A DNA stretch of 64,000 nucleotides from Epiperipatus broadwayi (GCA_028023455.1 JAQFVV010000001.1:124001-188000), one strand, 5' to 3'. Positions 7,910 to 62,519 are shown, counted from the stretch's first letter. Notes: a model not told the origin generated them from the letters alone. Translations and numbers: made by a program.

Positions 7910-8100
7910 AATGTTGTTCCTGACCCTTTACGTTCCTGTGGCCCATACAAACCTGCTAATCAAATATCATCAGAGATGTCCAGAATGAAAATTGGTATCT
8001 CATCAGATAATCATGATACTATTGGCATGATAGCAATTGATGAAACTGGAATAGTTGCTGCTGGAACATCCACTAATGGTGCCCGAAGTAAAATTCCTGG
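7910..8100 (+). CDS. AGA: AGA exon (191 bp) with the autoproteolysis site and catalytic Thr: NVVPDPLRSCGPYKP...HD/TIGMIAIDETGIVAAGTSTNGARSKIPG
   Basis: TTTTTAG acceptor ending 7909 and GT at 8101. Carries the HDTIG Ntn-hydrolase motif (Thr codon ACT 8018-8020, equivalent to human T206) and GTSTNG. Confidence 0.96.
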
Positions 8101-8813
8101 GTATTTTTTTTTTTAATAAGAATAATCTACTTTTAAAAACACTTAGAGAAATATAATTTTAAAATTGGAAAATAATATATTGTTATTTTTTGTTATAATT
8201 TGAATTTCTTTACATTATTTATGAAAGAGTCTTGGAATAAATTGATTAACATATCTGCTAGCTATGTACATGTCCTGGTACATATATCTAAGTAGATAAA
8301 ACTGGAATTTTTTTAGGCTCCATACTAAACAGAGGTGAAAGCATTCATTTAAAGTTATAATATCACTGAGAAAGTGAGATTCTGGAATAAATTGTACTAA
8401 AAGAATACCAAACTATCATTAGTGATAATTGAATTTTATCATTTGATCATAGTATCCTATTGCCTAAATATTTGATTTGCCTTTAAATAGAGGATTTAAC
8501 ATATATAATATGCATAACCTATAGCTAATCCAACTAGTCATTTCACTACTGGTTAGAAAATGAGTATCTAATTATTCTTACCTAAAGTGAAAAACAAGAA
8601 TAGAAAGCTACTAAAATCCACACCACCTGGAAATTGACAAGTTAGGTAATTAATGGTTTTCATTCTTTTCTGGGAAGTTTTTGGATAGGTCTTCGATTGC
8701 AATAGGTTATTTAAAAGCTGTTTTATCTTTTACATTAACTTACACATGCATATATATATATATTAAAAATGAAGTCTTGATTTGATAAATCTGAAATTTA
8801 TTTTTATCCACAG

Positions 8814-8921
8814 TCGAGTTGGAGATTCACCTATCCCTGGTGCAGGAGCCTATGCAGATTCTGAAGTAGGAGCAGCTGCTGCAACAGGAGATGGAGATAT
8901 TATGATGCGTTTTTTGCCAAG
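8814..8921 (+). CDS. AGA: AGA exon (108 bp), [36 protein letters not shown]
   Basis: CAG acceptor 8811-8813 and GTAAT donor at 8922. Contains the hallmark GRVGDSP and ATGxGD motifs; phases match the neighbouring exons. Confidence 0.97.
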
Positions 8922-9349
8922 GTAATATTATTTACTTTCTATGATTGTAGATATTTTTCATAATTATAATAAAGTAACATATTTATTTAGACATTAAGTG
9001 AGTTTTTATTTGTATATTGTTCTCTTACAATAGTATTTTTAATCAGATGATAATTGAAAATAAGATTCATTTATAAATTTTTATCCAAGTTCTAAGTAGT
9101 AAAAAATAATAAGGACAAATTAAATAAGAATGTTTTCTGGAGTGATGCAAGGAAGATACTAAAATAAACTCAGAAATTATTTTTTATTCCACAGTGAATT
9201 GATAATGATTAAAAATTAAATGAAATTTCTTATTTTTTGGGATTTCTTCTAACATTAGTTTAATTCGAGATCTATTAATTCTCTCACTTATTAATGCATT
9301 CTCTTACACATGTATTTACTTTCATTCATTTGTTAATCGTAACATACAT

Positions 9350-12684: not shown

Positions 12685-12721
12685 TGACTTTTTTTTTCAA
12701 AATTTGTCATATGTATTTTAG

Positions 12722-12855
12722 TTTTCAAACTGTGGAAAATATTAGAAATGGAATGGATACAACTATTGCTGCTGAAAAAGCCTTAGCTAAAATAGTAAAG
12801 TATTATCCTTCATTTTCTGGAGCCATTGTTGCTACTAACACTCTAGGAGATATCG
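12722..12855 (+). CDS. AGA: AGA exon (134 bp), FQTVENIRNGMDTTIAAEKALAKIVKYYPSFSGAIVATNTLGDIG
   Basis: AG at 12720-12721 and GTAAG donor at 12856. Forms the C-terminal part of track ORF 12564-12920 and aligns to human YQAVEYMRRG...FFGAVICAN. Confidence 0.94.
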
Positions 12856-15234
12856 GTAAGTTTATATATATATATATATTGCTTGATTCTCAATTTTTGT
12901 TACAGTGCTCTAGAATTTGAACTTACTCTTGAAACAAGTGGGATCAGCAGTAGGTTTAATTGACTATTAACTTTTTGTATTAATCTTTCATGATTATGAA
13001 AAGTTTTTTTATTATTATTTTTTTGATGGCAGTGGTTTATCATCTAGTCATTCTATTTTTATTTTAAATTATTGAGAATTGTAGACTCTATGATTCATTA
13101 AAGTTATGGTGTTTTATTAAAGTTCATGACATAGCTGTAATAATAAATATTGAGAGGTTGACCAGCAATAGCAAATTATTGCCAACAATTATCAAGAGTT
13201 ATTAATTATATTAGTCAATTACCTTATTTGCCTTTGGCAAAAATTTAATATTATGCAAATTACAGTAAGGGAATGGAAAATTAGCATCTTCAAATAATCA
13301 AATATTATTATTTGATTGTAGTTCGTTAATGCCTAAATATCTCATCTCTATCTGTATTTGAGCCTAAGATTTAAATTCTTAAAAATTTTCAGATCACAAA
13401 CGAGTTTATTTTTTACTAGATTCCCAATTTAAAGCCAACCCAATTAATCATGTAGTGTTGGACAGTAAATGAGTGTCTGTTTATTATTAAGTCCAAATTT
13501 AATTTGAAATGGTCAGACCAATTTTGATACCATGATTGTAAAAATGAAAAAAGATTATTATATATGATTTTCAATTATTAGTATAAATATCAAACTTCTA
13601 CAGGCATTTAGACCACAGTTTATCTTATAGCATATATGTGTGTGTACATGGGTCTAAAATTTAAATGACTATCAAAATTTAAATACTGAGAGCAAATGTA
13701 AAAAATTTAATTTGTAGAAGTTATTGCACATGTTACTAATTTTCTGAATTCTCAGTACTACTTGCCTGAATTCCCCCTTGATTTATATATATATATACAT
13801 GTATTAATCTGTAACTTGTCATCAGTTAACTATTTTCCAAATGTAATTCACTATACAACAACCAAAGCTTAATATACCAAAAGAACATTCACAATCTGTT
13901 GTCAAGGTAACCTGTATAAATAAAAGATAAAATCCATCTTTTGTTTCTATAGGTTGTTTTAGCAATAGATTGTCAGTATTCTATTGAATTATTAAGTTTT
14001 GGATGATGTGAAATTATACTGTGTGTCTAAATATATTGTAAAAATTTTACTCCGTTATAAGAAAGTAATATTCTACTGACAATGGTAATTTATCAAAAAA
14101 TATAATAATAAAAAAAGCAATATTCATGAATTAATTTAGTCTAAGGAAATTATTAATATCAATGAGTGACTGCATACATTGTGGAGTGATTATACAGTTT
14201 TTATTTTTAAATAACTAATTTATAATAGTCATGGATAATGACTAGGCTGGGCATTTATCCAGATCCAGATGTTTTCTAATCATTATTCTCTTCACATTAA
14301 TAATATTATTAAAAGACAAAGTAAAATAATCTAATTAGAATTCGAATAATAAATAAACAAATAAGAAAATTATTAATAATAACTCAAAGTTTAATTAACA
14401 AACGTAATGAAAATAATATAACAATTCATATTTACATCTGAATAATTGTATGGAAAGCATGTGTATCAGAAAAATCTTTATTTCTTTATAACAATTCATA
14501 CAAAAAAAAGTTTATACTAAGTTTATTTAGTTATCTATTTATGTTCCAGTGAGATCACTTTTTTTTAACATTTGAATTAAGATATATAGTCATAAGAATC
14601 GTCATATTTTAAGCATTTGCAAGCAATTATTATTTTTAATTTCTCATGATTTGTTTTCATTGAGTTTCTTTCATAATTTATTCCCATGAAGTTTTTCCTA
14701 TGATTGAGGGTATCAAAATGTATGCAGATTTATAAATCTGGTCATAGAAGAGTATTTTTGCTTGACAACTAATTAGAGGGCAAATTTTTTTGTGCCAATT
14801 GTCACATATTTTAAGCAACTTGCAAGCAATTATTAAGTCTGCAGAAACATAATTAAATTTTAAGGCAACCTTTTATTTATAGTGAAGCATTCTGAAACTG
14901 CATTATATCTACTTAAATAATCCTTAAATTTTTCTTGAATTCCATTTGTAAGTAGCAACAAAGAAGTGTTTTCCCTATCTTTTCTTTGAAAAGCAGATGA
15001 TGTAATAGTTTTTTTTACTGGTTTCCATAGCAACTGGGTAATTTTATTAATGTATTTTATAATAAAGAATTGTAATACATTTTTAATTTTTATAAATATT
15101 ATTATTAAATTTCTTCATAATTTATTTTATGCATATGACTTTTATAGATTTTAGAAGACATAAAAGAAAATGCATATACATTTACTAAAAAGCTATGCAT
15201 GTAAATTCTGTCATGGAGGTTACAATATATATAT

Positions 15235-15395
15235 ATATTAATTATAAGATTTTCACAGCTTTTATAGATGTAAATATTGACAGTATAGTGAGAATTTGTT
15301 TGCATTTATGTACATAATTAGTTATGATATAATTAAGCAACAAACAATTATAACTGGCAATTGTAAATTGAAATTATGTCATCTAGTAATAATAT
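15235..15395 (+). repeat. Dispersed ~160-bp repeat; second copy at 17296-17455
   Basis: Shared ATTTTCACAG...TATAGATGTAA...AACTGGCAATT...AAATTATGTCATCTA. Confidence 0.6.
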
Positions 15396-15401
15396 TTTTG
15401 T

Positions 15402-15750
15402 ATAAACCACTAAACATCACATGATCACCATGTCTTATGAGCACATAACTGTTATTAAACAGGCAAAACTGTCCATTAGTAGTGCCACCCTGTGCCAACC
15501 AGAGTAATCAATGGATGTCAGAAGACTTGTACATAAAATCCCCATCTAGTGCCTACTCATCCAATATCCCCAGACTAGTTTCTGGCTTGTGGCCTTCATC
15601 AGTAAGGAGAAGGCCACAAGCCAGAAATCAGTCTGGGGATATTGGATGAGTAGGCACTAGATGGGGATTTTATGTACAAGTCTTCTGGCATCCATTGATT
15701 ACTCTGGTTAGCACAAGGTGGCACTACTAATGGACAGTTTTGCCTGTTTC
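15402..15750. mobile_element. Family A element A1: head-to-head inverted pair with 141-bp near-perfect arms (15457-15597 and 15609-15749)
   Basis: The arms are reverse complements. 13-bp TSD ATAATATTTTTGT at 15389-15401 and 15751-15763. Confidence 0.88.
15567..15608 (-). ncRNA. Family A type I hammerhead with intact core; predicted cut between 15573 and 15572
   Basis: UCCUUA-CUGAUGA-AGGC-CACAA-GCCA-GAAA-CUAG-UC/UGGGGA; palindromic stem III ACUAGU. Confidence 0.82.
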
Positions 15751-15959
15751 ATAATATTTTTGTCTATATGGAGAGTTTTACCTGTTTTAAAAAAATTAAA
15801 CAATTAAATGATATTTTTAACTTATGTTCATTTAATTATATAAAGTTTATTATTAATTGCATAAAATGCTCTATTAATATATAAGAATGATCAAAATAAG
15901 TTTTTCATTATTTATTGTAATAATCTAGATGTTACAAAAGTCATTAGTCAGACATATAA

Positions 15960-17186: not shown

Positions 17187-17571
17187 TTTGTGTTATATTT
17201 TCTGAGATAAAGCTTACTAAATCCTTAAAAATCAAATTTCCTAATTATTTTTTACAAGAAAACAAATATCACCCATAAAAAAATTATATATATATATATT
17301 AATTATAAAATTTTCACAGATGTTATAGATGTAAGTATTGAAAATATAATGGGAATTTTCATGCGATTACCAAGATAAATAACTATAATGCAGTTAAGCT
17401 ATTAACTAATTAAAACTGGCAATTATAATCGAAAATTATGTCATCTAATAATAATACTTATATATATACATACACTGTACACACACATAATACATATCAA
17501 CTGAATTTTTTGCAGTTTGTAATAATTGTTACTAAATGATAATAAATTAATACATTTTGCTATTATTAAAG

Positions 17572-17660
17572 GAGCAGCATGCCATGGATTTCGCGATTTT
17601 CAGTTCAGTTTTCAGAAAACTGGAATGGGTAAAATGTCAACAAAAAATATGACTTGTTCG
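17572..17660 (+). CDS. AGA: AGA last protein-contributing exon, GAACHGFRDFQFSFQKTGMGKMSTKNMTCS; read-through of the donor adds VSNFEILGN and stops at 17688-17690
   Basis: AG at 17570-17571. GAAC...F.F...C pattern matches the AGA C-terminus. Consensus donor CG/GTAAGT at 17661 in phase 0. Confidence 0.9.
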
Positions 17661-17729
17661 GTAAGTAATTTTGAAATATTAGGAAATTGATTTTATATAT
17701 ACATTCAATAATTATAAAATATATTTATG

Positions 17730-17832: not shown

Positions 17833-19562
17833 TACGAACAACTGGCAAAGTAAATCGTTTATTACAAAATATATTTACGTAATTTTTCTCTCTTCATTTA
17901 CATTCACATTAGCAAATATTTTCTTATTTATGATAAAGTTTTATAATTTAGTTTTATAATTTTATTTTTTAATATTAAATCATCTATCCTCTTTATTACT
18001 ATTTTACTGTGCTTTTATTACAATCCAGACAGTTTTGATTGCCTCAGCAATCTTCTTCAGAACTTCTCATATATCCAACCAATAAGAAAGATTTTTTTTG
18101 TTGTTTTTTTTTTTTTAAAACTTCACCCCCACCCCCCCATTTTTATTTAATTCTGCACACTATGTATCATCTATTTGGAACATTAATATTTTCAAAATAA
18201 AAGATCATAATCATTCTTTTGATATCTTTTCCACTAAGCAAAAAATTCAATGGATTTTATAATATATCTTTCTATTCATTGCATGGACTTCTTTTTTTTT
18301 AATCATTGTGATTATAGTTTTTTATCAGTGATATTAAGCTCTCCATTTTAAAATGAAAATCTAAACATTAGTAAAATCAATGTAGTCACTAGATGGCAGT
18401 GATAATAGACTTGATTAACTAGAAGATATATTGAAGAATTGGTTAAGATAGTGAAATAAATTTCAATGTATCTATACAAAAATTGAATAGTTCTTACTTT
18501 CTAGTGGAATATTAAATATCAAAGATTAAGATAATACGGTAGAAAATTTGATAATATATATAATAATAACAGTGGAAAAAAATTGTTATTTTTTAAGGCA
18601 TGTAACAATTTAGTAAAGATAGAAGAAAAATAATGGAATTGTGGATGTATATAATGAGAAGAAAGATTATTGGAAGAAAAAAGTTGATAATTTTTTTTAT
18701 TTGTTTTGTTTTGGGGTTTGTTTTTTGCGGGGAGGGGGTAGGGGATAGCAGAGAAATTAAAAATAAAATAATGAGAAAAAAAACATTTCTTTAAAAGTGA
18801 GATAGAAGGAATAAAAATAAATAAGAATTATATATATTAATTCATTGTAATGATACATCGTTTGTTATAGTCAGATTAGCAAACTCTGTAGCTCAATATT
18901 CATGTATTGTGGTCCAGCTTTGTTACTTTTGGCACTTGAATTTCTTATTAATGCATAAGCATTAAATTATTTGATTATTTATTTTAATGATAATTAATAC
19001 CTATGATAGTGACATTGACCAGACAGTTGCTACATTACATTGCACTACATGAGTTTCTGGATAAACAGTTTTATTTTTGTAAAGAAAGCTGATTGATTTT
19101 GTTTATTGCTTATAGCTTGACTTCTAGAATGGAGTCAAACTATTGTCTAATTTAATGTAAAAATTTGAAGTTATGTGATATATTTTTATGATTTTATCAT
19201 CTTTTTGTCAAAAGTGTTTATGATTAATTTATATCAGGTAACATAACTATTTAAACAAGTTTGAAAAATCTGATTTCACTATCATCTAGTAGCTATTGAT
19301 TTGTTTCAATAGCAAAGAGAGACAAGATGGATTTACAATAGTATAAAAAGAGTTTCAGAAAGAGGGAATATTTTACTCACCAGTGTCTAGGCAAATGACC
19401 TATACACAAAAATTGCTGCTTTGTCTAAGAAGTCATTTTTAATGATATTACTATTATTAGTTGTATCAATATTAATTTTTATATCTGGTACGTTTAAGTC
19501 ATCTTTAACTATGACATATCTAAAGTATAAGGTTTCTTTACAAAGATATATATACATATATA

Positions 19563-19648
19563 ATGTTTAAATATAGGTATACTTTATATCTCTGAAGTAT
19601 AATTGCATCTAAACTCCAGGGATATAAAGTATACCTATATTTAAATAT
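19563..19648. repeat. Hairpin with 35-bp near-perfect arms
   Basis: ATGTTTAAATATAGGTATACTTTATATCTCTGAAG versus CTCCAGGGATATAAAGTATACCTATATTTAAATAT. Confidence 0.8.
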
Positions 19649-20154
19649 TACAGATTCGGCCTGTATCCTATCCATCCTTTTTCTGGGTATTTAAATGGAC
19701 AAGGTGCTATAAATGAGGGGGTCAGAATGACTTAAAGTCAACATGGACATGACAATAATATTGGCATCATCAAGAAATTTGGGTGTTCTACATCAGATTT
19801 TCAATGGTATTGTAGGCTGAAGAGTTGGATGATGGAGAAGATTGTAGCCTGACTATTAAAGTTTGAAGATTTGCTATCTTAATATAAACTGAACACTGAT
19901 TATATATATGTGGGAGATAATGATCTGGACCAACTGATGAGTGCTGGTTCAGCATGAAATACTTATATTGGAGATCATTTATCTTTTTCACATGTGTGTG
20001 ATCACATGTATCAGTTGTATGAGATAGCCAATAAACATCACATGATTACCACATCCTATGCCTGCCTATAACTTTTATTAAGACAGGCAAAACTCTCTAT
20101 ATGTATTGCCACTCAGTGCAAGCCAGAGTAATCAAGGGATTTCAGATCCAAGAC

Positions 20155-20196
20155 TCCTCACTGACAAAGGCCACAAGCCAGAAACTAGTCTGGGGA
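20155..20196 (+). ncRNA. Family A hammerhead with G8A change (C3-A8 mismatch, probably catalytically impaired)
   Basis: UCCUCA-CUGACAA-AGGC-CACAA-GCCA-GAAA-CUAG-UC/UGGGGA; stem I extends by AUCCAA/UUGGAU beyond a GAC/UA internal loop. Confidence 0.78.
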
Positions 20197-20562
20197 TATT
20201 GGATGAGTAGGCACTAGATGGGGATTTTATACACAAACCTTTTGGCATCCATTGATTACTCTGGCTTGGACTGAATGAAGAGTTTTCCCTTTTTTAATAA
20301 CAATTATAGGCGGGCATAGGAGGTGGTGATCATGTGATGTTTATTGGCTTAAAACCAATCCTGCCTAATAGGATATTGGTGGCTGGGTACTGAACTGAGT
20401 TCAGACCCATATGACTATATAAGCTAATGAGCTTGGATTGAAAATATTATGGTGTTTTCAGTTTAAGACTCATGATTTTGTAGTTAAGTAGAGATAAAAG
20501 GTGGCTGCTGGAGGATTGCATTAGATCCTAAGATCTAGGTGCAGTGCTCACAGAGCCAAGGC

Positions 20563-20604
20563 TCCTCACTGACGAAGGTTACAAGCCTGAAACTAGTCTG
20601 GGGA
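20563..20604 (+). ncRNA. Family A type I hammerhead, fully canonical; predicted cut after 20598
   Basis: UCCUCA-CUGACGA-AGGU-UACAA-GCCU-GAAA-CUAG-UC/UGGGGA; stem II is fully paired and stem I is extended by CCAA/UUGG. Confidence 0.88.
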
Positions 20605-21690
20605 TATTGGATGAGTAGGCACTAGATGGGGATTTTATGCAAAAACCTTCCGGCATCCATTGATTCCTCTGGCTTGCACTGAGTGGCAATACATACAGAG
20701 AGTTTTGCCTGTTGTATGAGATAGATTGGATGGCTAAAGGGAGCATGAAAGTCTGGGTTAACATACTTTATATATATGTATTGTGCAAATATGTATATGT
20801 CTAAAAATAATTATTGAAATATATAATGGAGTATTATTACAATGTAAAACTATAAGAGTGGTCCTTCATTTTCCATTTATTACAGCTCTAGATTTAAAAA
20901 AAAAAAAAAGAATTGATTTTACAAAATTGTAATAAGATGAAAAAAATATTTGACATTGTGCTAGTATATCTTTAAATCATATTTATAATATGTAAAATTT
21001 AATTTATGAGCATCTTATGAATAATTAAAAGTGCTTAATATCTCATCTTTTATCTTAGCTAGCTAATAGTGATATCATTTTAGGTATTTTGTCATTTGTG
21101 TAGCTATGAAATAATTTAAATTAATTTATTTATTATATAAGAAAATTATTAACTGATTATATAAATATTTATTTTATATAGCACTATGTTTTATAAACTA
21201 TAATATTAATAATTAGCCATTAAGCTAATGCACATGCCCTTTGTGGATTTTTAAACGCATGTGCATTAGCTTAACTGATTATATATAATTAGAAGCCTTT
21301 ATTTTTTTAGTTGCAAGTTTCCTTTTTATTTATCTCACATACTGTTACATTGTCAGGACACCCAGTTGTGTTTAGTATAGAAGTCTATGTTGGATTTTGG
21401 GGCTCTTAAGCAAATATTTATATATATATTTTAATATTTATAATATAGTTTATTACCTTTTTTATCATCTTTTAATTTTATAATCAGCAGTACATAAATC
21501 CCAAAGACCTAGGAGTCCAAAAACATTTCTTTAGTTTGTTTCACAATATTTATGCCACTGTTTTAATAAAGCAACCAGATTAGATTTTGGTGTAATATTA
21601 CTCTTTTTAAGTTTTTCAACTATTATGTCACTTGAATTTTTTAATTAATTAAGATAATACTTCAGCTATAAAGAGAAACTTAGGATTTAC

Positions 21691-22186
21691 TAAACTATAT
21701 ATCAGTAGTCTTAGCAATATAACATCACTTAAGACTTAAAACAGGGACTATTTATAGTCCCTGCTTTAAGTTTTATGTGATGTTATATTGCTAAGACTAC
21801 TAATATATGGTTTAGCTGAAAATCCCTCAGCCCCATATAGCTATTTGAGTTAGATAGCTGGGTTTGAAGACATGTAGGTGTCTGAAAATTTCAGATTTTC
21901 CATTTAATAGATAACTTTTAAATAAATGCTGTCTTTGGGTTGGTATTTTTAGATCTAATATCTGAAGCTATCCTAGTGCCTCTCTAAGGAGTGCCAAAGC
22001 ACAAAACGATGGTCAGACATTAGGGGGAGGGGGGTTCTGACCGAGATATTTTAAATGCTTTCTCTGGCTAAGCATTTTTCACAAAACCTGTTGAGCAATT
22101 GGCAATGCTCATTGTTTATATCTTACAAGCTTAAGAGAATGGGGTCATGTGATTTATTACTATTTTTTTATTTGACTATTTATAGT
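21691..22186 (+). mobile_element. Family B element B2: one monomer (21746-22186) preceded by a ~60-bp fold-back duplication
   Basis: Reverse-complement homology to B1 and B3. The GACTATTTATAGT hairpin occurs at both ends (period 428). 21691-21751 is the inverted copy of 21754-21814. Confidence 0.85.
21978..22019 (+). ncRNA. Inactivated family B hammerhead (G5A, G12A)
   Basis: GCCUCU-CUAAGGA-GUGC-CAAA-GCAC-AAAA-CGAUGG-UC-AGAC; orthologous position to the B1 HHR. Confidence 0.75.
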
Positions 22187-29298: not shown

Positions 29299-29840
29299 CA
29301 GTGGTCTTCAACTCTTGGTCCGTGGACGGAGCCAGGCCGCAGAAGTTTTTTTACCGGTCCACAGTAGATTGGCAGGAAAGTTTGTAATAACAAAATAATG
29401 AGTTTAAACTTTTAATTAATATAAACAATTTTTTCATCTCATTTTTACCCAATTAAAAAAAAAGAAACAGAACGACAACAAAATCTAATCAATCATACAT
29501 AAATTAATAGTTTTTCTAGTTATAACCGATGTTTAAGGAGGGGGGGAGGGATAGAATTAAATTTTTTAATACTTTTCTAAAAAAAAAATCAATTAAAAAA
29601 AAAAAAGTTTTTTATTATATAAACTCCATATATATATAACTTCATCTTGTATATTTAACATTGTTGTTTTGATCAGTTATAACAATTATGCTCATCTAAG
29701 GCTAAGCAGTTTACATCTTTAAGAAAATTTATCTACAGACTTTTGCCGGTTCATGAAACCTTGTCCTTATTTTTGCCAGTCCACGAAACCTTATCCTTAT
29801 TTTTACCGGTCCACAGGTGTGAAAAGGTTGAAGACCACTG
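29299..29840. mobile_element. hAT (Charlie/Buster-type) MITE, 542 bp
   Basis: 14-bp TIR CAGTGGTCTTCAAC / GTTGAAGACCACTG. Perfect 8-bp TSD CTCTAGAA (29291-29298 and 29841-29848), matching the nTCTAGAn preference. CCGGTCCAC-like subterminal repeats. Confidence 0.93.
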
Positions 29841-32800
29841 CTCTAGAAGACTTCTGATATTATACTGATTGCAGATTTTTTTAATTTGTCTGCTATTTTT
29901 GGAATGTATGGGTAGCCTACAGTACCAATAATTGTCTTTTTTCTTGATGGTTCTTTTTGTTGTCTATTTAACATTTTCTTAATAACATCTGGTAGGTAAT
30001 CATTTTTCATAAGAGTTTCTTCTATATAGATCTTTTCTTTTTCCAAATTGCTGGTTGCTGAACAAACTTCTTTTGCTCTGTTCCATAGTGATAGTATAAC
30101 TCCATGTTTTGTGTTTCTGATGTGATTGGATGTATAAGCTATGTATTTTCCTGTATGGGTAGGTTTTTGGTAAACTAGTTTTGATTTTGCCATGAGGGAG
30201 TCTTGTCACAAGAACATCTAAGAATGCCAATTTTTGTTGTCCTGATTCTATTGTGAATTCAGTTGAAGGGGATGTTATGTGTTTCCAGTAAGTTTGTAGC
30301 AGTGCTTCATCATGTGGCCATACAACAAATGTATCACCCACATAACAAACTTTAGGTGGATATGGAGTAGTTTTTATAGTAGTGGTTGCAAGTTCTTCCA
30401 TGTAAATATTGCTAGTCAGGGGAGACAGTGGTGAGCCCATAGCCATTCCTTGATTTTATTGGAAGAATTTTGTGTTATATTGAAAGTAGATTGTTTTTAT
30501 ACAGATTGTTAATAGTTCCATTATACTATCAATAGGAAGAGCTGTTCTAGTTTGTAAACTATTATCACCATTTAATATTTTCCTAACAATAGACAATGCT
30601 TCTTCACATGGTACACTCATGAATAAACTTTCCACATCAAAGCTTACCAGTAAGTCAGTTCTTCCAATTTTCATGCTCTTGATTAATTCTAGAAAGTGTC
30701 TGGAATCCCTGACAAAGGACTGGGTCTTGTGTGCCAAAGGACTTAGAACTTTGAGAAGAAATTTTGGCAAAGTGAATTCCTAGAACTAACAATAAGTCTT
30801 AATGTAACATGATTCTTATGGATTTTAGGTAGACCATAAAGATGAGGAAATTTGCTGAAATATGATGCTATTTTACTTTTTTCTGAATCAGTGAAGTCCC
30901 TGTGATGTTTTCTGGGTAATGCTTGTAACTTTGTTTCAATACTTGGTATCGGACATGTTTAATTTTTATAATGGGTTGCATTATTTTAAAAAAGTTCATC
31001 TGTTTAGTGTTAATTCATACATTGATAATTAACAAATTTATTATTATGAGAGTTAATGTGAGCTGTAGTTTTGGAAATTTTGCTAGGATAAAGTTATGTA
31101 CTTTTCAATAAAAATATGAATATAAAGTGATGTAGATGAAACAATATCTGAAATATAAGATTAAATAAATAAAATTATAGAAAAAGAGTAAAGACTGAAT
31201 ACCTTATCAGAGAAACACCATTGAGATTTGGAGAGACACCTGATTTTATCTTATCACTACTATATATTGCAGTTCTGATTGCAATTTATTTTGAGAGCTT
31301 ATAGTGATGCATCACATGTAATTTATTGTTTTATTTTTTAATGTAATTGTTAGCTTATTTATATTATAGATACTTAGATGTTATCCTGTCTACCAAGCTT
31401 GGCTGCTATTTTTTATTAATGTTACAATTTCAGGGGCCCTATTATTATTTATGTGGGTTTTTTTAAATTTTTATTTTACTGAGTATGTGTTACTTGTTAA
31501 ATTTTAATAAATTGATTATAAATTTTATTCAGAATGTTTATTTCAAATTTCTTTTATTTATGTTACAATGCATATATGCCGACATGCTCTGAAAAGTGTC
31601 ATAGTTTGTTTACATTCAGCATCTTTATTTTTGTTACTACTATTGCAAAAAGGTTAAAGTTTGGGATCTTCCTTTGACAGAACAGCATGCAGTGGAGTAT
31701 TTCCGAAGATATGTGATCCTGCCCTTATGAAAAGTCTGTATTAATGGGCACTTTATGTTTTATTTATATATATTAATAAGTTGAAGTCTGTGTTAATAGG
31801 CACAATATAACACTTTACTTTTCTTGTATTTTTATATTAATAAGTTGATTTAATACAATAATAATAATAAAGTGGAAATATAATTAATTTTTGTAGAATT
31901 TTTTCTTTTTTAAAAATAACACGAAAAACAAAATTATTAAATACAACCGCTTCTTGTCAACCATTTTGTTTTAAGTATTTATTATATGACCCTGAAACTA
32001 AATAATTAAAAAATGGCTGTCAAGCTTAGTAGACAGGATAATACACAAGTACTTATTATAAAAATTAAATACTGCCTAACGCTATACTAACAAAATTACA
32101 ATACTAGCCAAAAAAACTAAACATTACTAATAGTACCTATTATATGTATTTTCCAAAATAAAATGTGTTGAATATTTTTTAGTCATTAATAATGTTATTG
32201 CTTTTGATAATTCTAACATATATTTGAATTGTGTTTCCTTTCTGTTTATAACTTTGCTATGTTTACCAATAGCACAAAATATATTTTAAAATATTTAGTT
32301 ATAAAATAATAAATATTAAAAATATATAGAAGTTTAAAAAAAGCAAAACTCAATTTCTACAATCTAAAATGTTGTCATCCCCTCAACTACATATATCAAT
32401 TTTTCACTTAATCATTGATTCTATCAGTTGGTCAGAATTGGACCCATTGTTTAAAATTTACAAGTATTAAATTATAAAATAATGATCAAATCTTAAACTA
32501 CAATGAAAAGAGATAGATCCATTATGACTAATTCATAATCCCGGAAGGCTTGTTCATATAAAAAAAAATGTATATATAATGAGTAAATTGCACTTAAGCT
32601 TTAAATCAGTTTGAGAATCAATTGTTTTTAATTTCGTATAATTTTTGCTAAGAAGATCCAAGTTTAATAGGTTGATGCTAATCATCTTAGTAATACTTGT
32701 CTCTAACAATGTCATTTGACAGCATTCAACTGTTACTATATCGATTCTCAATCTTGAAAAACTAAATATGTTACCATTATCTTTTAAATTCTACATAGAG

Positions 32801-37176: not shown

Positions 37177-40100
37177 CAGTGCTGAATTTAGACTTGATGA
37201 GGCTCTAAGTTATGATATAAATCCTGAGGCCCCTATCATTTTAAATTACATGAGCTAATCTCAGAAAACCTTTAAAATATATACACCTTTTAAATATATG
37301 GATAAAGGAAATATATTGGCATTTAATTTTTATTAAAAGAAATAATAAAGAATGTGTTTGCAAAATCACAGAAATTATATTATAAAAGGCTCTATGTTCC
37401 AACTTGAAACTTTTTTTTTTCTTGATTTCCCAAATGCAAAATCATTGCATAAAAAGATATGCTGCATAATATGTCACTTTCCATATTCATGAGGCTAAAT
37501 GCAGACAATTTTTCTAAAGACATAGTTGCTCTCAATTCATTTTTTATTCTTTTTAGATGTTAAAATGATCTTTCTCCTGAACAATTTGTTACCATTAGAC
37601 ACAAAAATAGTTATAATATTGCTTCAACATTAGAGAAAAGTAATTGAATATTGTCTTAAAAAATGATTTGATATAAATCTTTGTGTTGAATTTGTTCTTT
37701 TTCAGAATAATTCTTGACATAACCATGGAAGTGCCTCAATTCACTCATGAGGTTAATATCAACATTGTGTGGATACTTTTTCATTAAGGTATCTACTGCT
37801 TTAGGTAGTCATCCATCTGAAGCTTCTAAATCAACTAAAAATGAAAATTTATTTGCAACATAATTATAGACTGTTGCTCTTTTTGTTAAATTTGCCTCAA
37901 TGCTGTCTATGATATGAATGAAGGACTTCAGTTGAAATTTGTCTCTTGGAGAAGGTTTCTCATCAGCATCATGTGCAGCTCCATCATTGTCATTTTTTTC
38001 TGTCTTTCTTTTTTCTGTAGAATTATAATCCACATCAGGCAAACTAGATTTAGCTTCTTCAATATCACCAAAAGTTTCTCGAATATTTTGAACATAGAAA
38101 GTGATACATACAGATTTTCACATGTGGTAAGTGCATCTCTGGATCCCAGAGAGCCAGACTGGTTTTGTGAAATTCTTCCAGAAAATGATTCCATAAATGT
38201 AGCATAAAATCCAAACTCTAGTTCCTCCATTTTTTTCAGAAGAGTATTAACTTGTAGCTCCTTTTTCATTCTCATCAGCATAAATGTGCCTTAGATTATC
38301 TATGATTGGTTTATAATGTACATATTTGGCAGACACTGCTTTGATATGTGCTTCCCACATAGTGTCAGACAGTCTCTTTAGTTTTATGGTAGCTGAGTCT
38401 GTTTTTAAGGAAGATAACATCACAGGCCACCTCTTTGTAGAAGATGAAAAGAAAGTGTGTAGCTCTTGAACAATAGCAAAAAAGTTTACTGCCTCTAAAC
38501 AGCAATCTACAGTGGGATGGCTGAGAAGATTTAGTAATATTCAGCACATGGAATTTATATAACATGCTTACTTAACTCAATGATTTTTTTGTTGCATTCC
38601 ATTGTATTTACCAGCCATATCTACTGCACTATCATATGACTGTCTCATCATTTATTGAAATCTACTTTGCAGCCCTTATATAGATAATCTACCACTATAC
38701 CTTCATCACTGATTTTTCAACTCTAGGAAAGTTAGAAAGTATTCAACAAGTAAACCATCACCAGGTAATACATATTCCACTATAACAGTTAGTTGATCCA
38801 CATGGAAAAAATCAGGCATAGAGTCCACAGACAAACTGAAGTAACCTGCTTTTCTCAGATCATCCAAAGTTGATTCTCTTACTTTATTAGCCATAATCTG
38901 CACAAGTTCATTACATACTATCTTTGATAAATATGATGACCCAGATTCTTTGTTTCAATAGTGTTTTATATGGTTGGAAAGAAATGGATCAAACTTAGCA
39001 ATCAAATTCTAACAAATCAAGGTAGTTGCTATTATTTGATGATTCAAAAGTTTCATTGTCTCCTCAAAAAGCCAATCCATATTTTGCTAATGTGAATATC
39101 ACTGCAACAACATGCTCAATCACATTCTTCCAGTAAAGCTATTCTTCTTTCATTTGTTTTGCTAATCCTGAATTTAAAGTCAAACTCCTTTTTTTTGTCA
39201 AGTATACAAGCAAAGCTTTTCTATATTCTTCAGAGTTTTGATGATTTTGAATAATTGTGGGATTTTACCATTCAGAAAATCCATCAGAAGCTAGTGCTAC
39301 TATTGGTGTTGAAAACAGTTTGCAAACAAAACAAGAATCACAAACAGTTGTTGGAGAGTACACAAGCCATTCCTGATTGTATGCTTCACCATTAACTTTT
39401 CTGTTCTAAAAAAGATCTTTCAAACAATATCTAACCTGATGTTGGAATGAATCCTTAAAATTTTCAATGGACCATTCCAATGCTGATGCTTTGATGGACC
39501 TTTTAAGATGGAGTATGAGAGTATATCCACTGTGATTTCATGATTGTTCCAACTGTAGATGTCAATTTTGTAACAGCACCCACACTCACACTAGGATCAG
39601 TTTCAATATTTCCATCAACTGAGATTCCAGACTCTATGATCCCAATATCAGAATCAGTAGGTTGTTGTTGTTTTGGGCTTTGCTGATCTCCTTAGATTTG
39701 TGGATCATCTTCTATTCCTGAGGTAAAATATCTGTCAAGTTTGGGCAATGCTTTGGGCTCATCTTTAAACTGCTGTTTTCTTTTTCTCTTCTGATATCTG
39801 CTTTCAAATGTTCACTTCATTGTATGGCTGGAAACAGAATAGCAAAAATAAATGCTAGAAAATAAAAGATTATAAACATGAAAAATAATTTATATATATA
39901 TAATTCCTTATATATTTTAGATAACATAGAATACCATGCTAGCTGATCACCAGTCTTGAATATAAAATATATGAAAAAGAAAGGAAAAAAAAAATTTAAT
40001 ATTCATATTTTATCCTTAGCAGGTAATGACAAAAGATATGTAATATATATTTACTTTACAGTTTGCAGTACGAATGACTGAAATGATCCAAGTTAATAAA

Positions 40101-40346: not shown

Positions 40347-41125
40347 GTGCACACAAACGTAATATAAACATGCAGTTTATATCAAATATGATTGTGCCTT
40401 CAACCATGGAGGAATAGGGTTGATTATACTCATATTAAAAAGTGACTGTATAAGAAACAATGCAGGTAAGTGCATACCCAAATTAAATAAAAGATGGGCT
40501 ATAATGCATGATAGTAGTATTGTGTGTGTGAATATATATACTGCATAACATAGCATACTATAATAATTTAATTTATATTAAATTATAAAGATTATCATAT
40601 ATATATATTCGTATATAAATAAGGCCTTGGATATTATTTCAATTTTGTTTATAGATTAACATGTCAACAAAAATAAGTGCATATAAAGTAGTAGTATGAA
40701 ATTAATGAATATGTCAATTTGCCAGCTACATATTCAATTGAAAATAATTATAATATAGTTTACACTACAATCTTTTCAAAAGTATTTAAATATTTTTACT
40801 TAATCACCATTTTGTTTTTAATTAGTTGCAGTTATTTATAATTAAATAATTTATTTACATGTCTGCTATGACACATGAGAAGAAAAAAAAGTATTTACTG
40901 GAAACATATTTACTGTATATTCCTATTAATTGGCTGTTTATTCTTAACACTCGTATAAATTGTGTATTATTCTTTATAAGTTATTTAGCTTAAAAATTTG
41001 AGTTGTTTTTAATTAACACTTATTTAAAGTTAATCTAGGTTGAAATCCAACTATTACTCTAACAACAATATAGTTTTTGTTTTTGTTTAAGAAGTTAAAA
41101 AATTATTCACTAAAAAAAGTATTCA

Positions 41126-41292
41126 AGGCAAAACTCTTTATACAGTAATGCCACCCTGTGCCAACCAGAGTAATCAATGGATGCCAGAAGGCTTGTGCAT
41201 AAAACCCTATCCAGTGCCTACTCATCCAATATCCCCAGACTAGTTTCTGGCTTGTGGCCTTCGTCAGTGAGGAGTGTGCTAGTATGAGATAG
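41126..41292 (-). mobile_element. Family A element A3 with an intact HHR at 41232-41273 (predicted cut between 41238 and 41237) and a short inverted tail fragment at its 5' end
   Basis: Minus strand reads TCCTCA-CTGACGA-AGGCCACAAGCCA-GAAACTAGTC-TGGGGA, followed by the family tail. 41274-41292 resembles the inverted tail of copy A4. Confidence 0.85.
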
Positions 41293-44200
41293 AGTTCATG
41301 TGCTGTTTAATGGTTTAAAAAAATATTCCTTGTATCAAAATCAATTGGTCTAATAATAGCTTTCAGAAAAGTTGAGAATTATTTTTGTTGATCTATTTCA
41401 GTATTTTTTAATTTTATTATTTTGTAACTACTTATAATCATTCGGCCATAATTATTTTAATTTGCGAATTATTCTAGTACCTGAGATTTTTATAATAATT
41501 TTGTGGCAATGCCATTTTTCTTCAGTGATGTGGGGGGGTCGTAGTTGTGATTATTATGAAAGCCTAAAATGCCAGAATAATTTGCAAAGTTAGAATAATT
41601 ATGGCCGGACGATTACGTTATGGCAGTGCTAATTCCAAAATACCCTTCTTTATATGAATCTAAAAATTACTTCAAAATACACCGTTACAGAAATTTGGGG
41701 GAAATATGTAAATAGTTTCTAATATATATTTTAATTAAATTAAAACTCGTTAATTAGGCTTAATCTAACCAAAGACACTTGATTAAATCAAAATTTATAT
41801 AAGAAGCCATTTAATATTTCTCCCCAATATCTACAGTTGCAAATTTTGAAGTTAAAATAGTAGTAGTAATAATTTTTAAAGATATAAAATTGTGTATACA
41901 AGAAGCATGAAGTAATGATTTTTAAAAAAAAGAAATTAATTTTTAAAAATAATAATAACTACATTTTATCTTTAATAAATTCTAAAGTCCATATTTTTTT
42001 GTTTTGTTTTTTAAAATTAAGATCATTTGTGAATTTATTGAATAAGTTCATGCATCATTAAAAGCAGTGCTTAAAAGTGTACAGTTTGTAAATTAGTTTA
42101 ATACATTTTCATTTGTGTTATGTAAAGAAAATATAATTAATATTTTATGGTATTGCAATGCAATTTTTTAAAATCTTTTCTGCATTATTTTGTTGGTTAG
42201 ATGAGTTCTGATGCGCTAAATATGTAGAGAAAAATTTAATGATATATGCACTTAAAAAAAAAAATGTATCAACAAATAAAATAAAGACCATAACCTCAAA
42301 TGAAGGAATAAAATTTTTAACAATTAAATCACATGCTTTTTGTGGACAACCATAAAAGCAGAATTGTATAGATAGCTGAGAAACTAAACCTAATTCAAAA
42401 AGAAATGGAAAGATACAAATGTGATAATATTAGATCAGTTGAAGTGCATTGAGAGTCTGTACAAAGTAAATGAATGTGAAATCATTTGGTCTGGATATAA
42501 TTTTAAAGCATAAAGCTGATGTGGAATTTCTACTAGATAAAAATTAAGGTGTCTTAGGATCTAAATGCAATTATATCAACAAGATTTGACCCAATTTTTT
42601 TTAAGTATTTCAATAATAAAAATATATATATTTGCATCAAATAGTGTAGAAAATAAGATAGACCAGTTCTATAGGAATCTGAAATTGGTACTTGATGCTA
42701 TATTGCATAAAACTGTAATTATTACTAAAAAATATTGGAAATAAAAAGAATAAATGGGAACATTATGCAAAAATATGGTTTTTGAAAAACAAATGTCATG
42801 AAAACTATAGTTTTTCTCTAGATATGCAATTGCAACAGGTCTTCACAAAATAAAGGTAGAGATACATGATTGGTCAACATCAGTGTACAATAAAACTGAA
42901 TTTTCCAAAAAAAAAAAAAAAGACTACAAACTCAGTAATTGAAATTTTCAAATTAAATCTTAAAAAAAAAAGAAGAAGTAATATTCAGAAGCAATACCAA
43001 AGTCAACAAAATACCAGAAGTAAAAATAGTAAAAAATATACAATTTAGGATCAAAAATATGAATATTTTAAGTAATTTCAATACTTTTCTAAATTATAAC
43101 TTTAATATGCAAAATAATTTTAATAATGTTTTAGTGAAAGAATTGAAGTTAAACCAGCAAAAAAAAAACATTTGAAAGACTTGATCACACAAGAAACATT
43201 AAAACACAAGAAATATTAAAACTGATATAAGATAAAATAATTGTAAGAAAAAGAAAATGATTCAAAAGTTTCAAAACAAAAATATTGCATAAGTTGATTA
43301 GAATATCAGGGAGATGAATGCAGGGATATAGCAAAGTTCTAAGGCAAATAAAATTCAAAGAAATAAATAAGATTTATATATACAGTATATAATGAGAGGC
43401 AAAATAGAAGACAATAAAAATGTTCCAATGAAATTGAAAAGTTATAGGAAGAATGTTTTTAGACATTATATAAAGCGGACTTTGATCATAAAATAATTCC
43501 CAATTTTTTAAAAATGCTTTCTGAGATTGGAGTTCATTTGTAATATTGAAATGAATATTTTACTGGAAGATGTACAAAAGGCAGGGAATATATGAAGTCT
43601 TTTATAGTCAGTGATAAAAATAATACAATTGTCTTTTGAGATGATTGGTTTATTTTTTAAGGTCTTCCAATTTGTTTACCCAGAATTGTATCAATAAAAA
43701 TATTGGAATCTAAAAATATACCATGATGATTCTTCCTAATAAAAACGAATACTGCAAATGTTGGAATTGAACATAGTAATAAATAAAATAATTAAATGAT
43801 TTTATTTTTCAGTAGTTCACAAGAAGTTTAATCACTGCGTAAAACCAAGCAGGGTAGTGAAGATATTTTATTGCATAGTTCTTTTAGTCAATATAGAAAA
43901 ACAGAAACAATATAAATATAAAAAATACAGAGTAATTACATTTAAGCACATGTTAATGAAAGTCCTAATGAATATCTTACATATCAGATTAAAGTTTTAA
44001 ATGAAGATAAGCATGGTATATCACCAAGATGAATTTAGAAAAGGCAAGAACAGCAGATAAAGAATATTTTCATTAAACTCTATTGCTAATGATATTGCAT
44101 TATCTTAATTTATTAACTGCAATTATATCATAAATGTATATAATGTAACATTCTTCTTTTGGCTTATGAAAAATTAAATGTAGCAGTTACATTATTTGCT

Positions 44201-45981: not shown

Positions 45982-46472
45982 CTAGGGTAGGTTCAGACAC
46001 TAGATGTAAAAATACCAACCCAAAGCCAGCATTTATCTAAAGGTTATCTAATGAGTGAAAAATCTGAAATTTTCAGATACCTACATATCTTCAAACCCAG
46101 CTAGATATACAACTCAAATAGCTATATGGGGCTGAGAGATCTTCAGGCATAGAATATATTAGTAGTCTTAGCAATATAACATCACATAAGACTTAAAGCA
46201 GAGATTATAAATAGTAAAAATAACAGTCATAGATCACATGACTCAATACTCTTAAGGTTGTAAGATATAAACAATGAGGATTTCCAATTCCTCAACAAGA
46301 TTTGTGATAAATGCTTAGCCAGAGAAAACATTTAATATATCTCTGTCAGGAAAATAGCTATTATATTTGTATTATATGAAAGCTCCCGGAAATAATGCTA
46401 TGAATATATATATATACTTTAAATGATCAAATTTCAAAGTTAAAATTTGTCCATGATTTTGTTTTAAATTGA

Positions 46473-47100
46473 TTGTATGCTAAAATTAGAAACAGACCTA
46501 CTCAAGCTGATGAAAAACCCTGGTTATCATTTCCATACATAGCGGCGGCTACCATTAGTATAAACAAAATCTGTGCTGAAACATGCAGAATTAGTCTTCA
46601 TATCTCTCTCACCCTGAATCATCTGATTAACAAGCTGCCCCCAAACAGGTTTCCCAATTCATGTATAAAATTATACATAAAGTTCAATGCAATTTATTTT
46701 GGTGAATCTCATAAAAATCTCTCTACAAGAATCATGCAGCACAAATATCATTACAATTGAGCTAAGAATAATATACATATTTATTCTATTCTCCTTAAAC
46801 ATGAGTCTAAGCATAATCACAGCTTTGAATCTACATCATGAGTATTATGGGCTCTGAAAGAAATTATGCTAAATACAAAGTTAAAGAAGCCTGGCACATT
46901 GCCAATAATATACATGCAATCAATAAGAAAGGATCCTGTGTTTCCCTATCAAAAAAGTGATCATTTAAATAAATTTATTTACATCTTATAATCAAATTTT
47001 ATGTAATTCACCACTTTTGTGATTTTTCTATAAATCTCACAATCCTCTTGGATAACTATAGCGATGAGTATGATTCAGTTAGTTGAAAGCATGCTCAGCA
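46473..47100 (+). mobile_element. PLE GIY-YIG relic with a decayed terminal HHR-like GAAA-GCATGC-TC (47085-47096)
   Basis: IYFGESHKNLSTRIMQH...KVKEAWHI; the terminal motif resembles family D. Confidence 0.65.
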
Positions 47101-47689
47101 TGTTGATATATTTAACATTTTAAAGTATTAAACAAGTTTTTCTTAGGATACATGTTGTATGGATTATTTATATTGAATCACATTGTTGTGAGAAAGGTTT
47201 AAAAAGATTGGAATTACAAAATGTTATTATAAAGTCTTACATATATATATATATGAATACTCTGGAATAATCTTTATAACATGCACTATAGCAATATAAA
47301 AACAATAAATAATAGTTGTAGACAGCTTATAGCAACATACACCATTCTGAGTAGCATTTAACAATTAAAATTTTTAAAAAATCTCTATAAAATCACACAA
47401 CCCTAATGTTCCCATATGAATAGCCAACTTTCCACAATTTATGTACATAATTAATTGCTTATTTAATTTATTGTCTGTCATATTTATAAAATATGACTTT
47501 GATTTTTTTTTTCAAATCATTTTTCACATATAAAATAAAAATATTACTAATATAAAAATATTTACTACAAATAACAGAATTTTCAGCAAATACAGATTTA
47601 AATCTATTCACAGAATATTACAACTTATTATATAAAAGTTCATATTCATGAATTCTGTTTTTCAATGCACATTCCGATTTGCCAAGATA

Positions 47690-58791: not shown

Positions 58792-59002
58792 AAACCACTA
58801 AACATCACATGATCACTATCTCATACAAGCACATAATTGTTATTAAACAATTCAAAACAAAGCAAAACTCTCCATATAAGGCTCCTCACAAGCCAGAAAC
58901 TAGTCTGGGGATATTGGATGAGTAGGCACTAGATAGGGATTTTATGCACAAGCCTTCTGGCATCCATTGATTGCTCTTGTTAGCACAAGATGGCACTACT
59001 AT
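58792..59002 (+). mobile_element. Family A element A4: inverted tail arm plus a sense copy whose CUGACGA core has been deleted
   Basis: GCTCCTCA joins directly to CAAGCCAGAAACTAGTCTGGGGA (~13 bp missing); the family tail runs to GATGGCACTAC. Confidence 0.82.
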
Positions 59003-62440: not shown

Positions 62441-62519
62441 TATTATTCTTCAGCCTCTATTTAAATTCCAAAATGGCCAATTCCCATGACTTATCATATG
62501 GAATCACATTCAATTTATT

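What the first reader, a model, noticed from the sequence alone, without database searches (positions are those of the whole stretch)
20014..20724. Family A tandem with two sense-strand hammerheads 408 nt apart inside the putative last AGA intron
Seen: HHRs at 20155-20196 (G8A) and 20563-20604 (canonical) delimit a 408-nt monomer (20191-20598). The monomer is full of hairpins (20355-20379, 20390-20404, 20522-20537) and lies in a 14-bp direct repeat. Unlike A1 and B1, these HHRs are on the AGA-sense strand. Established: palindromic ACUAGU stems let two HHRs form a double hammerhead in which each core cuts the partner's site. Inference: within one pre-mRNA the intact core could cut at 20190/20191 while the G8A core fails at 20598. 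This predicts asymmetric intron cleavage that might favour the read-through AGA 3' end.
Basis: partly seen in the sequence, partly recalled or inferred. Interest (0 to 1): 0.8.

Follow-up and report, generated by a model that had tools for sequence, protein, structure and literature searches.

The report
Decayed hammerhead retroelement copy downstream of AGA
The two self-cutting "hammerhead" RNA motifs are real, but they belong to one old, partly decayed copy of an abundant non-coding jumping element, inserted by Penelope-type machinery about 2.3 kb past the end of the AGA gene's coding sequence; this is an ordinary example of a known kind, not a switch built for the gene.

Summary
Two + strand type I hammerhead motifs lie at 20155-20196 (core CUGACAA, G8A) and 20563-20604 (core CUGACGA). 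Their cleavage sites are 408 nt apart, and an exact 14-bp direct repeat flanks the element.

The layout is therefore TSD, inverted arm with tail, 1.4 tandem units, TSD. This is the published insertion signature of Penelope-like elements. Two other family A loci in the window show the same asymmetry and 13-14-bp TSDs.

The element is a non-coding non-LTR retrozyme copy. G8A is private to this copy and sits at a CpG in a CpG-depleted window (o/e 0.21). The two repeats differ by 10%.

The host-gene reading is not supported. AGA homologues end at 17660 and a stop lies at 17688-17690. No AGA-like coding follows up to 22 kb, and the element starts 2324 nt after the stop.

The double-hammerhead logic is sound, but its effect on AGA is untested. 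The scan had already noted the same family layout (s1-085765, s1-172147) and a comparable sense-strand case judged ordinary (s1-086062) elsewhere in this genome.

The parts
20014..20027 (.). Left target-site duplication GTTGTATGAGATAG
   Evidence: Exact 14-mer repeated at 20711-20724, abutting both ends of family homology. P about 6e-8 at fixed positions.
20028..20142 (-). Inverted, 5'-truncated copy of the unit's 3' region. 20028-20082 is the 55-nt 'tail', absent from the right end. 20083-20140 is the inverted copy of 20655-20712.
   Evidence: the repeat finder I1 (20026-20096 vs 20279-20349, 89%), I3 (20083-20140 vs 20655-20712, 95%) and I5. Alignment A1.
20143..20550 (+). Tandem unit 1 (408 nt), non-coding, GC about 41%
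   Evidence: Direct repeat D1 with spacing 408. GC content and longest open frame of 60 codons.
20155..20196 (+). Hammerhead 1: helix I UCCUCA/UGGGGA, core CUGACAA (G8A at 20166), helix II GGC/GCC, helix III ACUAGU, C17 at 20190
   Evidence: Descriptor scan and alignment A3. The other three family copies have G at this position.
20191..20598 (+). 408-nt interval between the two cleavage sites (the would-be monomer RNA)
   Evidence: MFE -125.3 kcal/mol, z = -3.79.
20551..20710 (+). Partial unit 2 (160 nt), ending at ...GAGAGTTTTGCCTGT, 112 nt after cleavage site 2
   Evidence: The direct arms at 15.7 kb and 41.1 kb have the same end point.
20563..20604 (+). Hammerhead 2: canonical core CUGACGA, helix II AGGUU/AGCCU (differs from the family at 20579, 20580, 20588), helix III ACUAGU, C17 at 20598
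20711..20724 (.). Right target-site duplication
17571..17690 (+). Last AGA-homologous coding exon. Homology ends at 17660, GTAAGT lies at 17661, and the in-frame stop TGA is at 17688-17690.

Best explanation
The interval 20014-20724 is a single, old insertion of a non-autonomous, non-coding hammerhead retroelement. It is a metazoan non-LTR retrozyme, the scan's 'family A'.

Inferred from the layout: the enzymes of a Penelope-like element (PLE) made the insertion by target-primed reverse transcription. This left a 14-bp target-site duplication, an upstream inverted 5'-truncated copy carrying a 55-nt tail, and a partial tandem of 1.4 units of 408 nt.

The two hammerheads are the element's own processing motifs. 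In an intact multimeric transcript, two neighbouring motifs pair through the palindromic ACUAGU (helix III) and swapped helices I. Each core cuts the partner's site, releasing unit-length RNA that can be circularised (published for this class, inferred for this family).

In this copy the upstream core has lost G8 through a CpG-to-CpA transition, and the two repeats have diverged by 10%. At most one of the two sites can still be cut, so no 408-nt monomer can be released. The copy is best read as dead.

It lies 2.3 kb downstream of the AGA stop codon in TE-rich DNA. Nothing indicates a host function.
For: Hammerhead anatomy:
- Anatomy and statistics of both motifs.
- The helices hold in all four family copies (94% of cells paired, against 22-44% when the partners are slid).

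Insertion layout:
- Exact 14-bp TSD.
- Inverted arm and tail.

Other family A loci in the window:
- The direct arms end at ...GTTTTGCCTGT (15.7 kb) or ...GTTTTGCCT (41.1 kb). The inverted arms at 15.4 kb and 58.8 kb continue about 55-57 nt further, to ...TGTTTAnTGGyT.
- TSDs are 13 bp (15389-15401 / 15751-15763) and 13/14 bp (41316-41328 / 41111-41124).

Published PLE signature:
- Partial tandems, an inverted 5'-truncated copy at the 5' end, and a tail at only one end (PMC8557442).
- The tail is the sequence between two internal RT start sites, roughly 85-90 nt downstream of the hammerhead cut, as I reckon from the paper's figures (PMC11167929). Here the two ends lie 112 and 167 nt downstream of the cut.
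- Type I hammerheads with a 6-bp helix I, short helix II and a 1-2-bp helix III capped by a palindromic loop, in 150-450-bp AT-rich tandem repeats with TSDs longer than 4 bp, define metazoan retrozymes (PMC7229834; PMC4209133). Their derivation from PLEs is argued in bioRxiv 10.64898/2026.07.22.740005.

Non-coding and decayed:
- Longest open frame 60 codons; GC 41% against 23-30% in the flanks.
- G8A is private to this copy and lies at the N7-G8 CpG. Window CpG o/e is 0.21. The 15.6-kb copy shows the other decay product, CTGATGA.
- 13 differences in 135 nt between the two repeats.

AGA coding ends at 17660/17690.
Against: - No autonomous PLE with sequence similarity to family A was found in the window, so the partner element is inferred from the insertion signature only.
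- The tail is 55 nt, longer than the 30-40 bp typical of PLEs.
- Rfam's hammerhead models do not match.
- Only four family hammerheads are available. They show no compensatory change, so there is no covariation evidence.
- Cleavage and transcription are untested.
- The two repeats could have differed already in a heterogeneous multimeric template, so 10% divergence is only an upper guide to age. The TSD is still 14/14 identical.
- GTAAGT sits exactly where AGA homology ends (17661). A 3'-UTR intron that reaches the element cannot be excluded.
Confidence: 0.85

Rival explanations
1. The element lies in a terminal AGA intron. In the pre-mRNA, the intact downstream core cuts at 20190/20191 through a double hammerhead, while the G8A core fails at 20598. 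The resulting asymmetric cleavage shifts AGA 3'-end choice.
For: - Both motifs are on the AGA-sense strand.
- The double-hammerhead pairings are all possible and nest in cis, at +7.3 kcal/mol over the MFE.
- GTAAGT lies at 17661, directly after the last conserved AGA codon. The hexamer occurs about 3e-4 per nt on this strand.
Against: - AGA homologues end at 17660, a stop follows at 17688-17690, and no downstream AGA-like exon is found up to 22 kb.
- Six AATAAA hexamers lie before 20000.
- The motifs are parts of a TSD-flanked transposon copy with private decay mutations.
- The inverted arm would form a 94-bp duplex around HHR1 before HHR2 is transcribed.
- Dimer-type hammerheads cleave poorly in vitro (PMC4209133).
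- A comparable sense-strand case in this genome was judged ordinary (s1-086062).
Confidence: 0.04
2. The locus is still an active retrozyme source. It is transcribed from its own promoter and yields 408-nt linear or circular RNA.
For: - There is one full unit between two hammerhead sites.
- The monomer is significantly structured (z = -3.79), as retrozyme RNAs are (PMC7229834).
Against: - Release needs cuts at both sites, but the C3-G8 pair is broken in HHR1. C3/G8 single mutants abolish cleavage in a PLE hammerhead (PMC11167929).
- HHR2 departs from the family in helix II.
- The repeats differ by 10%.
- No promoter evidence was obtainable.
Confidence: 0.05
3. This is not a retrotransposition product. 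It is either a local tandem duplication or satellite fragment, or a foldback/MITE-type DNA transposon with terminal inverted repeats.
For: Long inverted repeats lie near both ends (I3), and there is a direct repeat of 135 nt (D1).
Against: - The inverted repeat is offset from the left terminus by 55 nt, so the termini are not inverted copies of each other.
- A 13-14-bp TSD recurs at three independent loci.
- The arms are 5'-truncated at variable points but share fixed outer ends, as expected for reverse transcription from defined 3' start sites.
Confidence: 0.03

Closest known systems
Metazoan non-LTR retrozymes (Cervera and de la Pena 2020, PMC7229834)
   Same: - A type I hammerhead inside an AT-rich, non-coding tandem unit of 150-450 bp.
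- TSDs longer than 4 bp.
- Helix III too short for monomeric action.
- A structured monomer.
   Different: - Only 1.4 units are present, and one core is mutated.
- Expression and circular RNA are not shown.
- This copy also shows the inverted arm and tail, which that paper does not describe.
Penelope-like element insertions and their pLTR hammerheads (PMC4209133, PMC8557442, PMC11167929)
   Same: - Partial tandem (pLTR-like repeat carrying the hammerhead).
- Inverted 5'-truncated copy at the 5' side.
- Tail at one end only.
- Two discrete 3' ends downstream of the hammerhead.
- TSDs of more than 10 bp at AT-rich sites.
   Different: - No RT/GIY-YIG ORF, so the element is non-autonomous.
- The tail is 55 nt rather than 30-40 bp.
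- No sequence similarity to the PLE fragments in this window.
- Helix I/II dimensions are those of 'canonical' type I motifs rather than the most minimal PLE variants.
Newt satellite 2 / axolotl HHR_Amex1 double hammerheads (Forster et al. 1988 as cited in PMC4209133; PMC7229834)
   Same: A helix III of 1-2 bp capped by a palindromic loop, so two tandem motifs must pair to cut. Each core acts on the partner's site.
   Different: A different sequence family. Here one partner is G8A, so at most one cut is expected.
Conserved intronic hammerheads of amniotes (HH9/HH10; recalled from memory, not checked here)
   Different: Those are single-copy, deeply conserved, have stable helices and are matched by Rfam models. 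This one is a private transposon copy, it is not matched by Rfam, and it is not shown to be intronic.

Membership tests
Hammerhead ribozyme, type I | Conserved core C3-U4-G5-A6-N7-G8-A9 ... G12-A13-A14 ... non-G at position 17 | tested here: met
   HHR2 (20563-20604) has the full core. HHR1 (20155-20196) has A at position 8, so it fails this feature.
Hammerhead ribozyme, type I | Three helices around the core: helix I open, helices II and III closed | tested here: met
   Helix I is 6 bp and helix II is 3-5 bp. Helix III is A-U and C-G around a 2-nt centre, effectively 1 bp plus the palindromic tetraloop CUAG. 94% of cells are paired in four copies, against 22-44% when the partners are slid. 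There is no compensatory change.
Hammerhead ribozyme, type I | Match to curated covariance models (Rfam Hammerhead_1 and relatives) | tested here: not met
   No hit at gathering score on the window. No hit at E<=10 on 1.7 kb or on 81 nt.
Hammerhead ribozyme, type I | Site-specific self-cleavage | not testable with these tools
   Needs in vitro transcription and mapping of the products.
Metazoan non-LTR retrozyme | Type I hammerhead in head-to-tail repeats of about 150-450 bp, non-coding, GC below 50% | tested here: met
   408-nt spacing and 1.4 units. GC 41% and longest open frame 60 codons.
Metazoan non-LTR retrozyme | TSDs, when present, longer than the 4 bp of plant retrozymes | tested here: met
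   14 bp here, and 13 and 13/14 bp at two other family loci.
Metazoan non-LTR retrozyme | Expressed as unit-length linear and circular RNA | not testable with these tools
   No transcript data are available. This copy is predicted unable to release a unit because of G8A.
Penelope-like element type insertion | Partial tandem plus an adjacent inverted 5'-truncated copy | tested here: met
   Inverted left arms are also present at the other three family loci.
Penelope-like element type insertion | Short 'tail' extension present at only one end, reflecting two internal RT start sites | tested here: met
   A 55-nt tail lies on the inverted arm only. The same asymmetry holds at 15.4-15.8 kb; at 41.1-41.3 kb the inverted arm is tail sequence only and the direct arm lacks it. 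Its length exceeds the published 30-40 bp.
Penelope-like element type insertion | RT plus GIY-YIG endonuclease ORF | tested here: not met
   No ORF longer than 60 codons. The element would be non-autonomous. PLE ORF fragments exist elsewhere in the window but share no DNA similarity with family A.

The most novel reading that the evidence does not exclude
AGA transcription reads through, or a 3'-UTR intron starting at the GTAAGT of 17661 spans, the element. In that RNA the intact downstream core cuts at 20190/20191 via a cis double hammerhead, and this single asymmetric cut influences AGA 3'-end formation or transcription termination.
Probability: 0.03. Interest if true: 0.6.

Novelty: new member of a known kind. 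Interest (0 to 1): 0.14.

Why it matters
As a host-gene switch it would matter, but the evidence points the other way. This is one more decayed copy of an abundant hammerhead retroelement.

Its modest value is as a clean worked example. A non-coding 'retrozyme' unit carries the full Penelope-type insertion signature: a 13-14-bp TSD, an inverted 5'-truncated arm, and a tail on one end only. The two fixed 3' ends lie 112 and 167 nt after the ribozyme cut. [quoted passage not shown]

It also shows that the N7-G8 CpG of this family's core is a decay hot spot in a CpG-depleted genome. One product (N7 C to U) is harmless and the other (G8A) is inactivating.

Tried and rejected
- **Rfam:** gathering scan of the whole window, then E<=10 on 1.7 kb and on 81 nt. 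No hammerhead model matched. The only hits were sub-threshold miRNA-like matches to an AT-rich palindrome at 19556-19655.
- **External copies:** exact-pattern scans of metagenome contigs and viral contigs with the family hammerhead and the conserved post-cleavage block found nothing. Family statistics therefore rest on four loci in this window.
- **Flank homology:** BLAST of 19700-20027 and 20711-21100 against the window found only AT-rich low-complexity matches. A nested insertion into another family A copy is not supported.
- **AGA C-terminus:** the last-exon peptide found nothing in PDB sequences. Exon 4 matched human aspartylglucosaminidase chain B residues 66-109 of 141. A search with a tardigrade AGA did not bring up this genome's own gene model, so I could not read an annotated 3' end.
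- **Other scans:** the tRNA scan found none in the window. The sigma-70 promoter / terminator scan is irrelevant for a eukaryote and was empty.
- **Covariation:** with four copies the test is uninformative.
- **Readings rejected:** a chance motif and a MITE/foldback DNA transposon (the termini are not inverted copies of each other).

Full report
**1. The observation**

The window is an AT-rich (26% GC) animal sequence.
- 20155-20196: helix I UCCUCA/UGGGGA, core CUGACAA, helix II GGC/GCC, GAA, helix III ACUAGU, C17 at 20190.
- 20563-20604: the same helices, core CUGACGA, C17 at 20598.

The sites are 408 nt apart. CTGANGA..GAAAC occurs 7 times in the window, against 0.31 expected. The repeat 20143-20277 / 20551-20685 is 90% identical, and the 14-mer GTTGTATGAGATAG flanks the element at 20014-20027 and 20711-20724. 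A match at fixed positions has probability about 6e-8.

No Rfam hammerhead model matches, even at E<=10 on 81 nt. The identification therefore rests on the motif, its helices and its family context.

**2.

The stretch 20028-20142 is an inverted copy of the unit's own 3' region. 20083-20140 is 95% complementary to 20655-20712, and 20026-20096 is 89% complementary to 20279-20349. The full layout is:
- TSD;
- inverted 5'-truncated arm, whose outer 55 nt (20028-20082) have no counterpart at the right end;
- unit 1 (20143-20550);
- partial unit 2 (20551-20710);
- TSD.

BLAST of the element against the window found three more family A loci, at 15403-15795, 41126-41275 and 58790-58999. Aligning all arms shows a consistent asymmetry:
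- The direct arms end at ...GTTTTGCCTGT (20.7 and 15.7 kb) or ...GTTTTGCCT (41.1 kb).
- The inverted arms and the internal unit continue for about 55-57 nt more, to ...CATGTGATGTTTAnTGGyT.
- The inner (5') ends of the arms vary.

TSDs are present at two of the other loci: 13 bp at 15389-15401 / 15751-15763, and 13/14 bp at 41316-41328 / 41111-41124.

**3. What it is**

Partial tandems, an adjacent inverted 5'-truncated copy and a short tail at only one end are the published hallmarks of Penelope-like element insertions (PMC8557442). The tail has been explained in vitro by two internal reverse-transcription start sites lying downstream of the hammerhead (PMC11167929). Here the two fixed 3' ends lie 112 and 167 nt after the cleavage site.

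The unit is non-coding (longest open frame 60 codons) and has 41% GC in flanks of 23-30%. Its hammerhead has the architecture described for metazoan type I motifs:
- a 6-bp helix I, followed by a small internal loop and a CCAA/UUGG closing stem;
- a short helix II;
- a helix III of 1-2 bp capped by a palindromic loop (PMC4209133).

Such motifs sit in 150-450-bp AT-rich tandem repeats called non-LTR retrozymes, with TSDs longer than 4 bp (PMC7229834). [quoted passage not shown] The locus fits that class on every feature I could test. It lacks only an identified autonomous partner: the PLE fragments in the window share no DNA similarity with it.

**4. State of this copy**

Among the four family hammerheads, only HHR1 has A at position 8. 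The change is CG to CA at the N7-G8 CpG. The window's CpG observed/expected ratio is 0.21, against 1.29 for GpC. The 15.6-kb copy carries the other decay product, CTGATGA, which is neutral for the ribozyme.

G8 pairs with C3 and is essential. Single C3 or G8 mutants abolish cleavage in a PLE hammerhead (PMC11167929). The specific effect of G8A with C3 retained is from general knowledge of the ribozyme.

HHR2 keeps the core but differs from the family at three helix II/loop 2 positions. The result is a 5-bp stem instead of 3 bp plus an A.A mismatch. The two repeats differ at 13 of 135 positions. I read the copy as old and unable to release a unit-length RNA.

**5. The double-hammerhead argument**

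With ACUAGU pairing between the two motifs, topology requires swapped helices I. Core 2 (intact) then surrounds C20190 and core 1 (G8A) surrounds C20598. All 26 pairs are canonical or wobble and nest in cis. The constrained fold is 7.3 kcal/mol above the MFE of 20143-20620. Monomer mode would instead cut at 20598/20599, so mapping the cut would tell the modes apart.

In a transcript that enters from upstream, however, the inverted arm pairs with 20247-20349 (94 bp in the MFE of 20014-20724). This encloses HHR1 before HHR2 is made, and the swapped helices would have to cross that duplex. That last point is inference.

**6. The AGA link**

AGA exons lie on the + strand at 1689-1829, 7910-8113, 8773-8922, about 12720-12860 and 17571-17660.
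- Pfam Asparaginase_2 matches four of them.
- Exon 4 aligns to human aspartylglucosaminidase chain B residues 66-109 of 141.
- tblastn of fetched homologues covers all five.
- Homologues end at or within five residues of 17660. One 347-aa protein aligns to its last residue there.
- An in-frame TGA follows at 17688-17690.
- Nothing AGA-like lies between 17.7 and 22 kb, and six AATAAA hexamers precede 20000.

The element starts 2324 nt after the stop. Downstream DNA is filled with transposon ORFs. A GTAAGT sits exactly at 17661, so a 3'-UTR intron cannot be excluded. Its existence and extent are unproven.

The two hammerhead copies that do lie in proven AGA introns (6.9 kb and 15.6 kb) are antisense. 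This fits the reported depletion of retrozymes from introns but is too few to test.

**7. Verdict**

The ribozyme logic is right, and the host-gene interpretation is unsupported. This is a new, decayed member of a known kind. Earlier notes of this scan describe the same family layout elsewhere in the genome (s1-085765, s1-172147) and judged a similar sense-strand copy ordinary (s1-086062). My analysis agrees with them independently.

Noticed in passing
window 19930-19971 (+): A further hammerhead with a canonical core: CCAA / CUGAUGA / GUGCUG-GUU-CAGCAU / GAA / AUACUUAU / A / UUGG, with an outer AUGAUCU/AGAUCAU stem. It lies 43 nt upstream of the TSD on the same strand and is the only copy of its kind in the window. 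Its helix III is not palindromic.
   Followed up: partly
window 20015-20027 and 58816-58828: The 13-mer TTGTATGAGATAG of the TSD recurs, reverse-complemented, inside the tail of the 58.8-kb family A copy. The flanks show no other family homology. It could reflect a target preference for tail-like sequence, or it could be chance (about 1e-3).
   Followed up: partly
window 15389-15763: A head-to-head family A insertion with an exact 13-bp TSD (ATAATATTTTTGT). The two arms join inside hammerhead helix II, and only the minus-strand arm keeps a full core (CTGATGA). It lies antisense in a proven AGA intron.
   Followed up: partly
window 41111-41328 (-): A short family A copy with the consensus hammerhead intact (CTGACGA), a roughly 40-nt inverted tail piece joined directly to helix I, and a 13/14-bp TSD.
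   Followed up: partly
window 58790-58999: A family A copy in which the hammerhead core (CUGAYGA plus half of helix II) is deleted and the right arm is truncated. No TSD was found.
   Followed up: no
family A loci at 20143, 41275, 58870 and 15600: The 5' ends of the direct arms cluster within about 30 nt around the 5' edge of the hammerhead, not at the cleavage site. This suggests the templates were uncleaved RNAs, or that there is a preferred switch point there.
   Followed up: no
window 17661: GTAAGT lies immediately after the last codon that aligns to AGA homologues. The read-through stop is 9 codons later. A 3'-UTR intron or a tiny terminal exon is possible.
   Followed up: partly
window 19556-19655: An AT-rich near-perfect palindrome (46-nt arms, 87% complementary). 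It gives sub-threshold matches to several miRNA precursor models on both strands and is probably a small foldback repeat.
   Followed up: no
window 21690-21815: An inverted repeat with 62-nt arms, 92% complementary, 2 nt apart (I2).
   Followed up: no
window 29750-30960 (-), 46470-48300, 60080-63100: Open frames with reverse-transcriptase and GIY-YIG-like motifs (Penelope-like and LINE-like fragments), seen only in the six-frame translation and not searched further. Transposase-like frames also lie at 37800-38950 (-).
   Followed up: no
whole window: CpG observed/expected is 0.21 against 1.29 for GpC, implying heavy CpG decay, presumably through methylation.
   Followed up: partly
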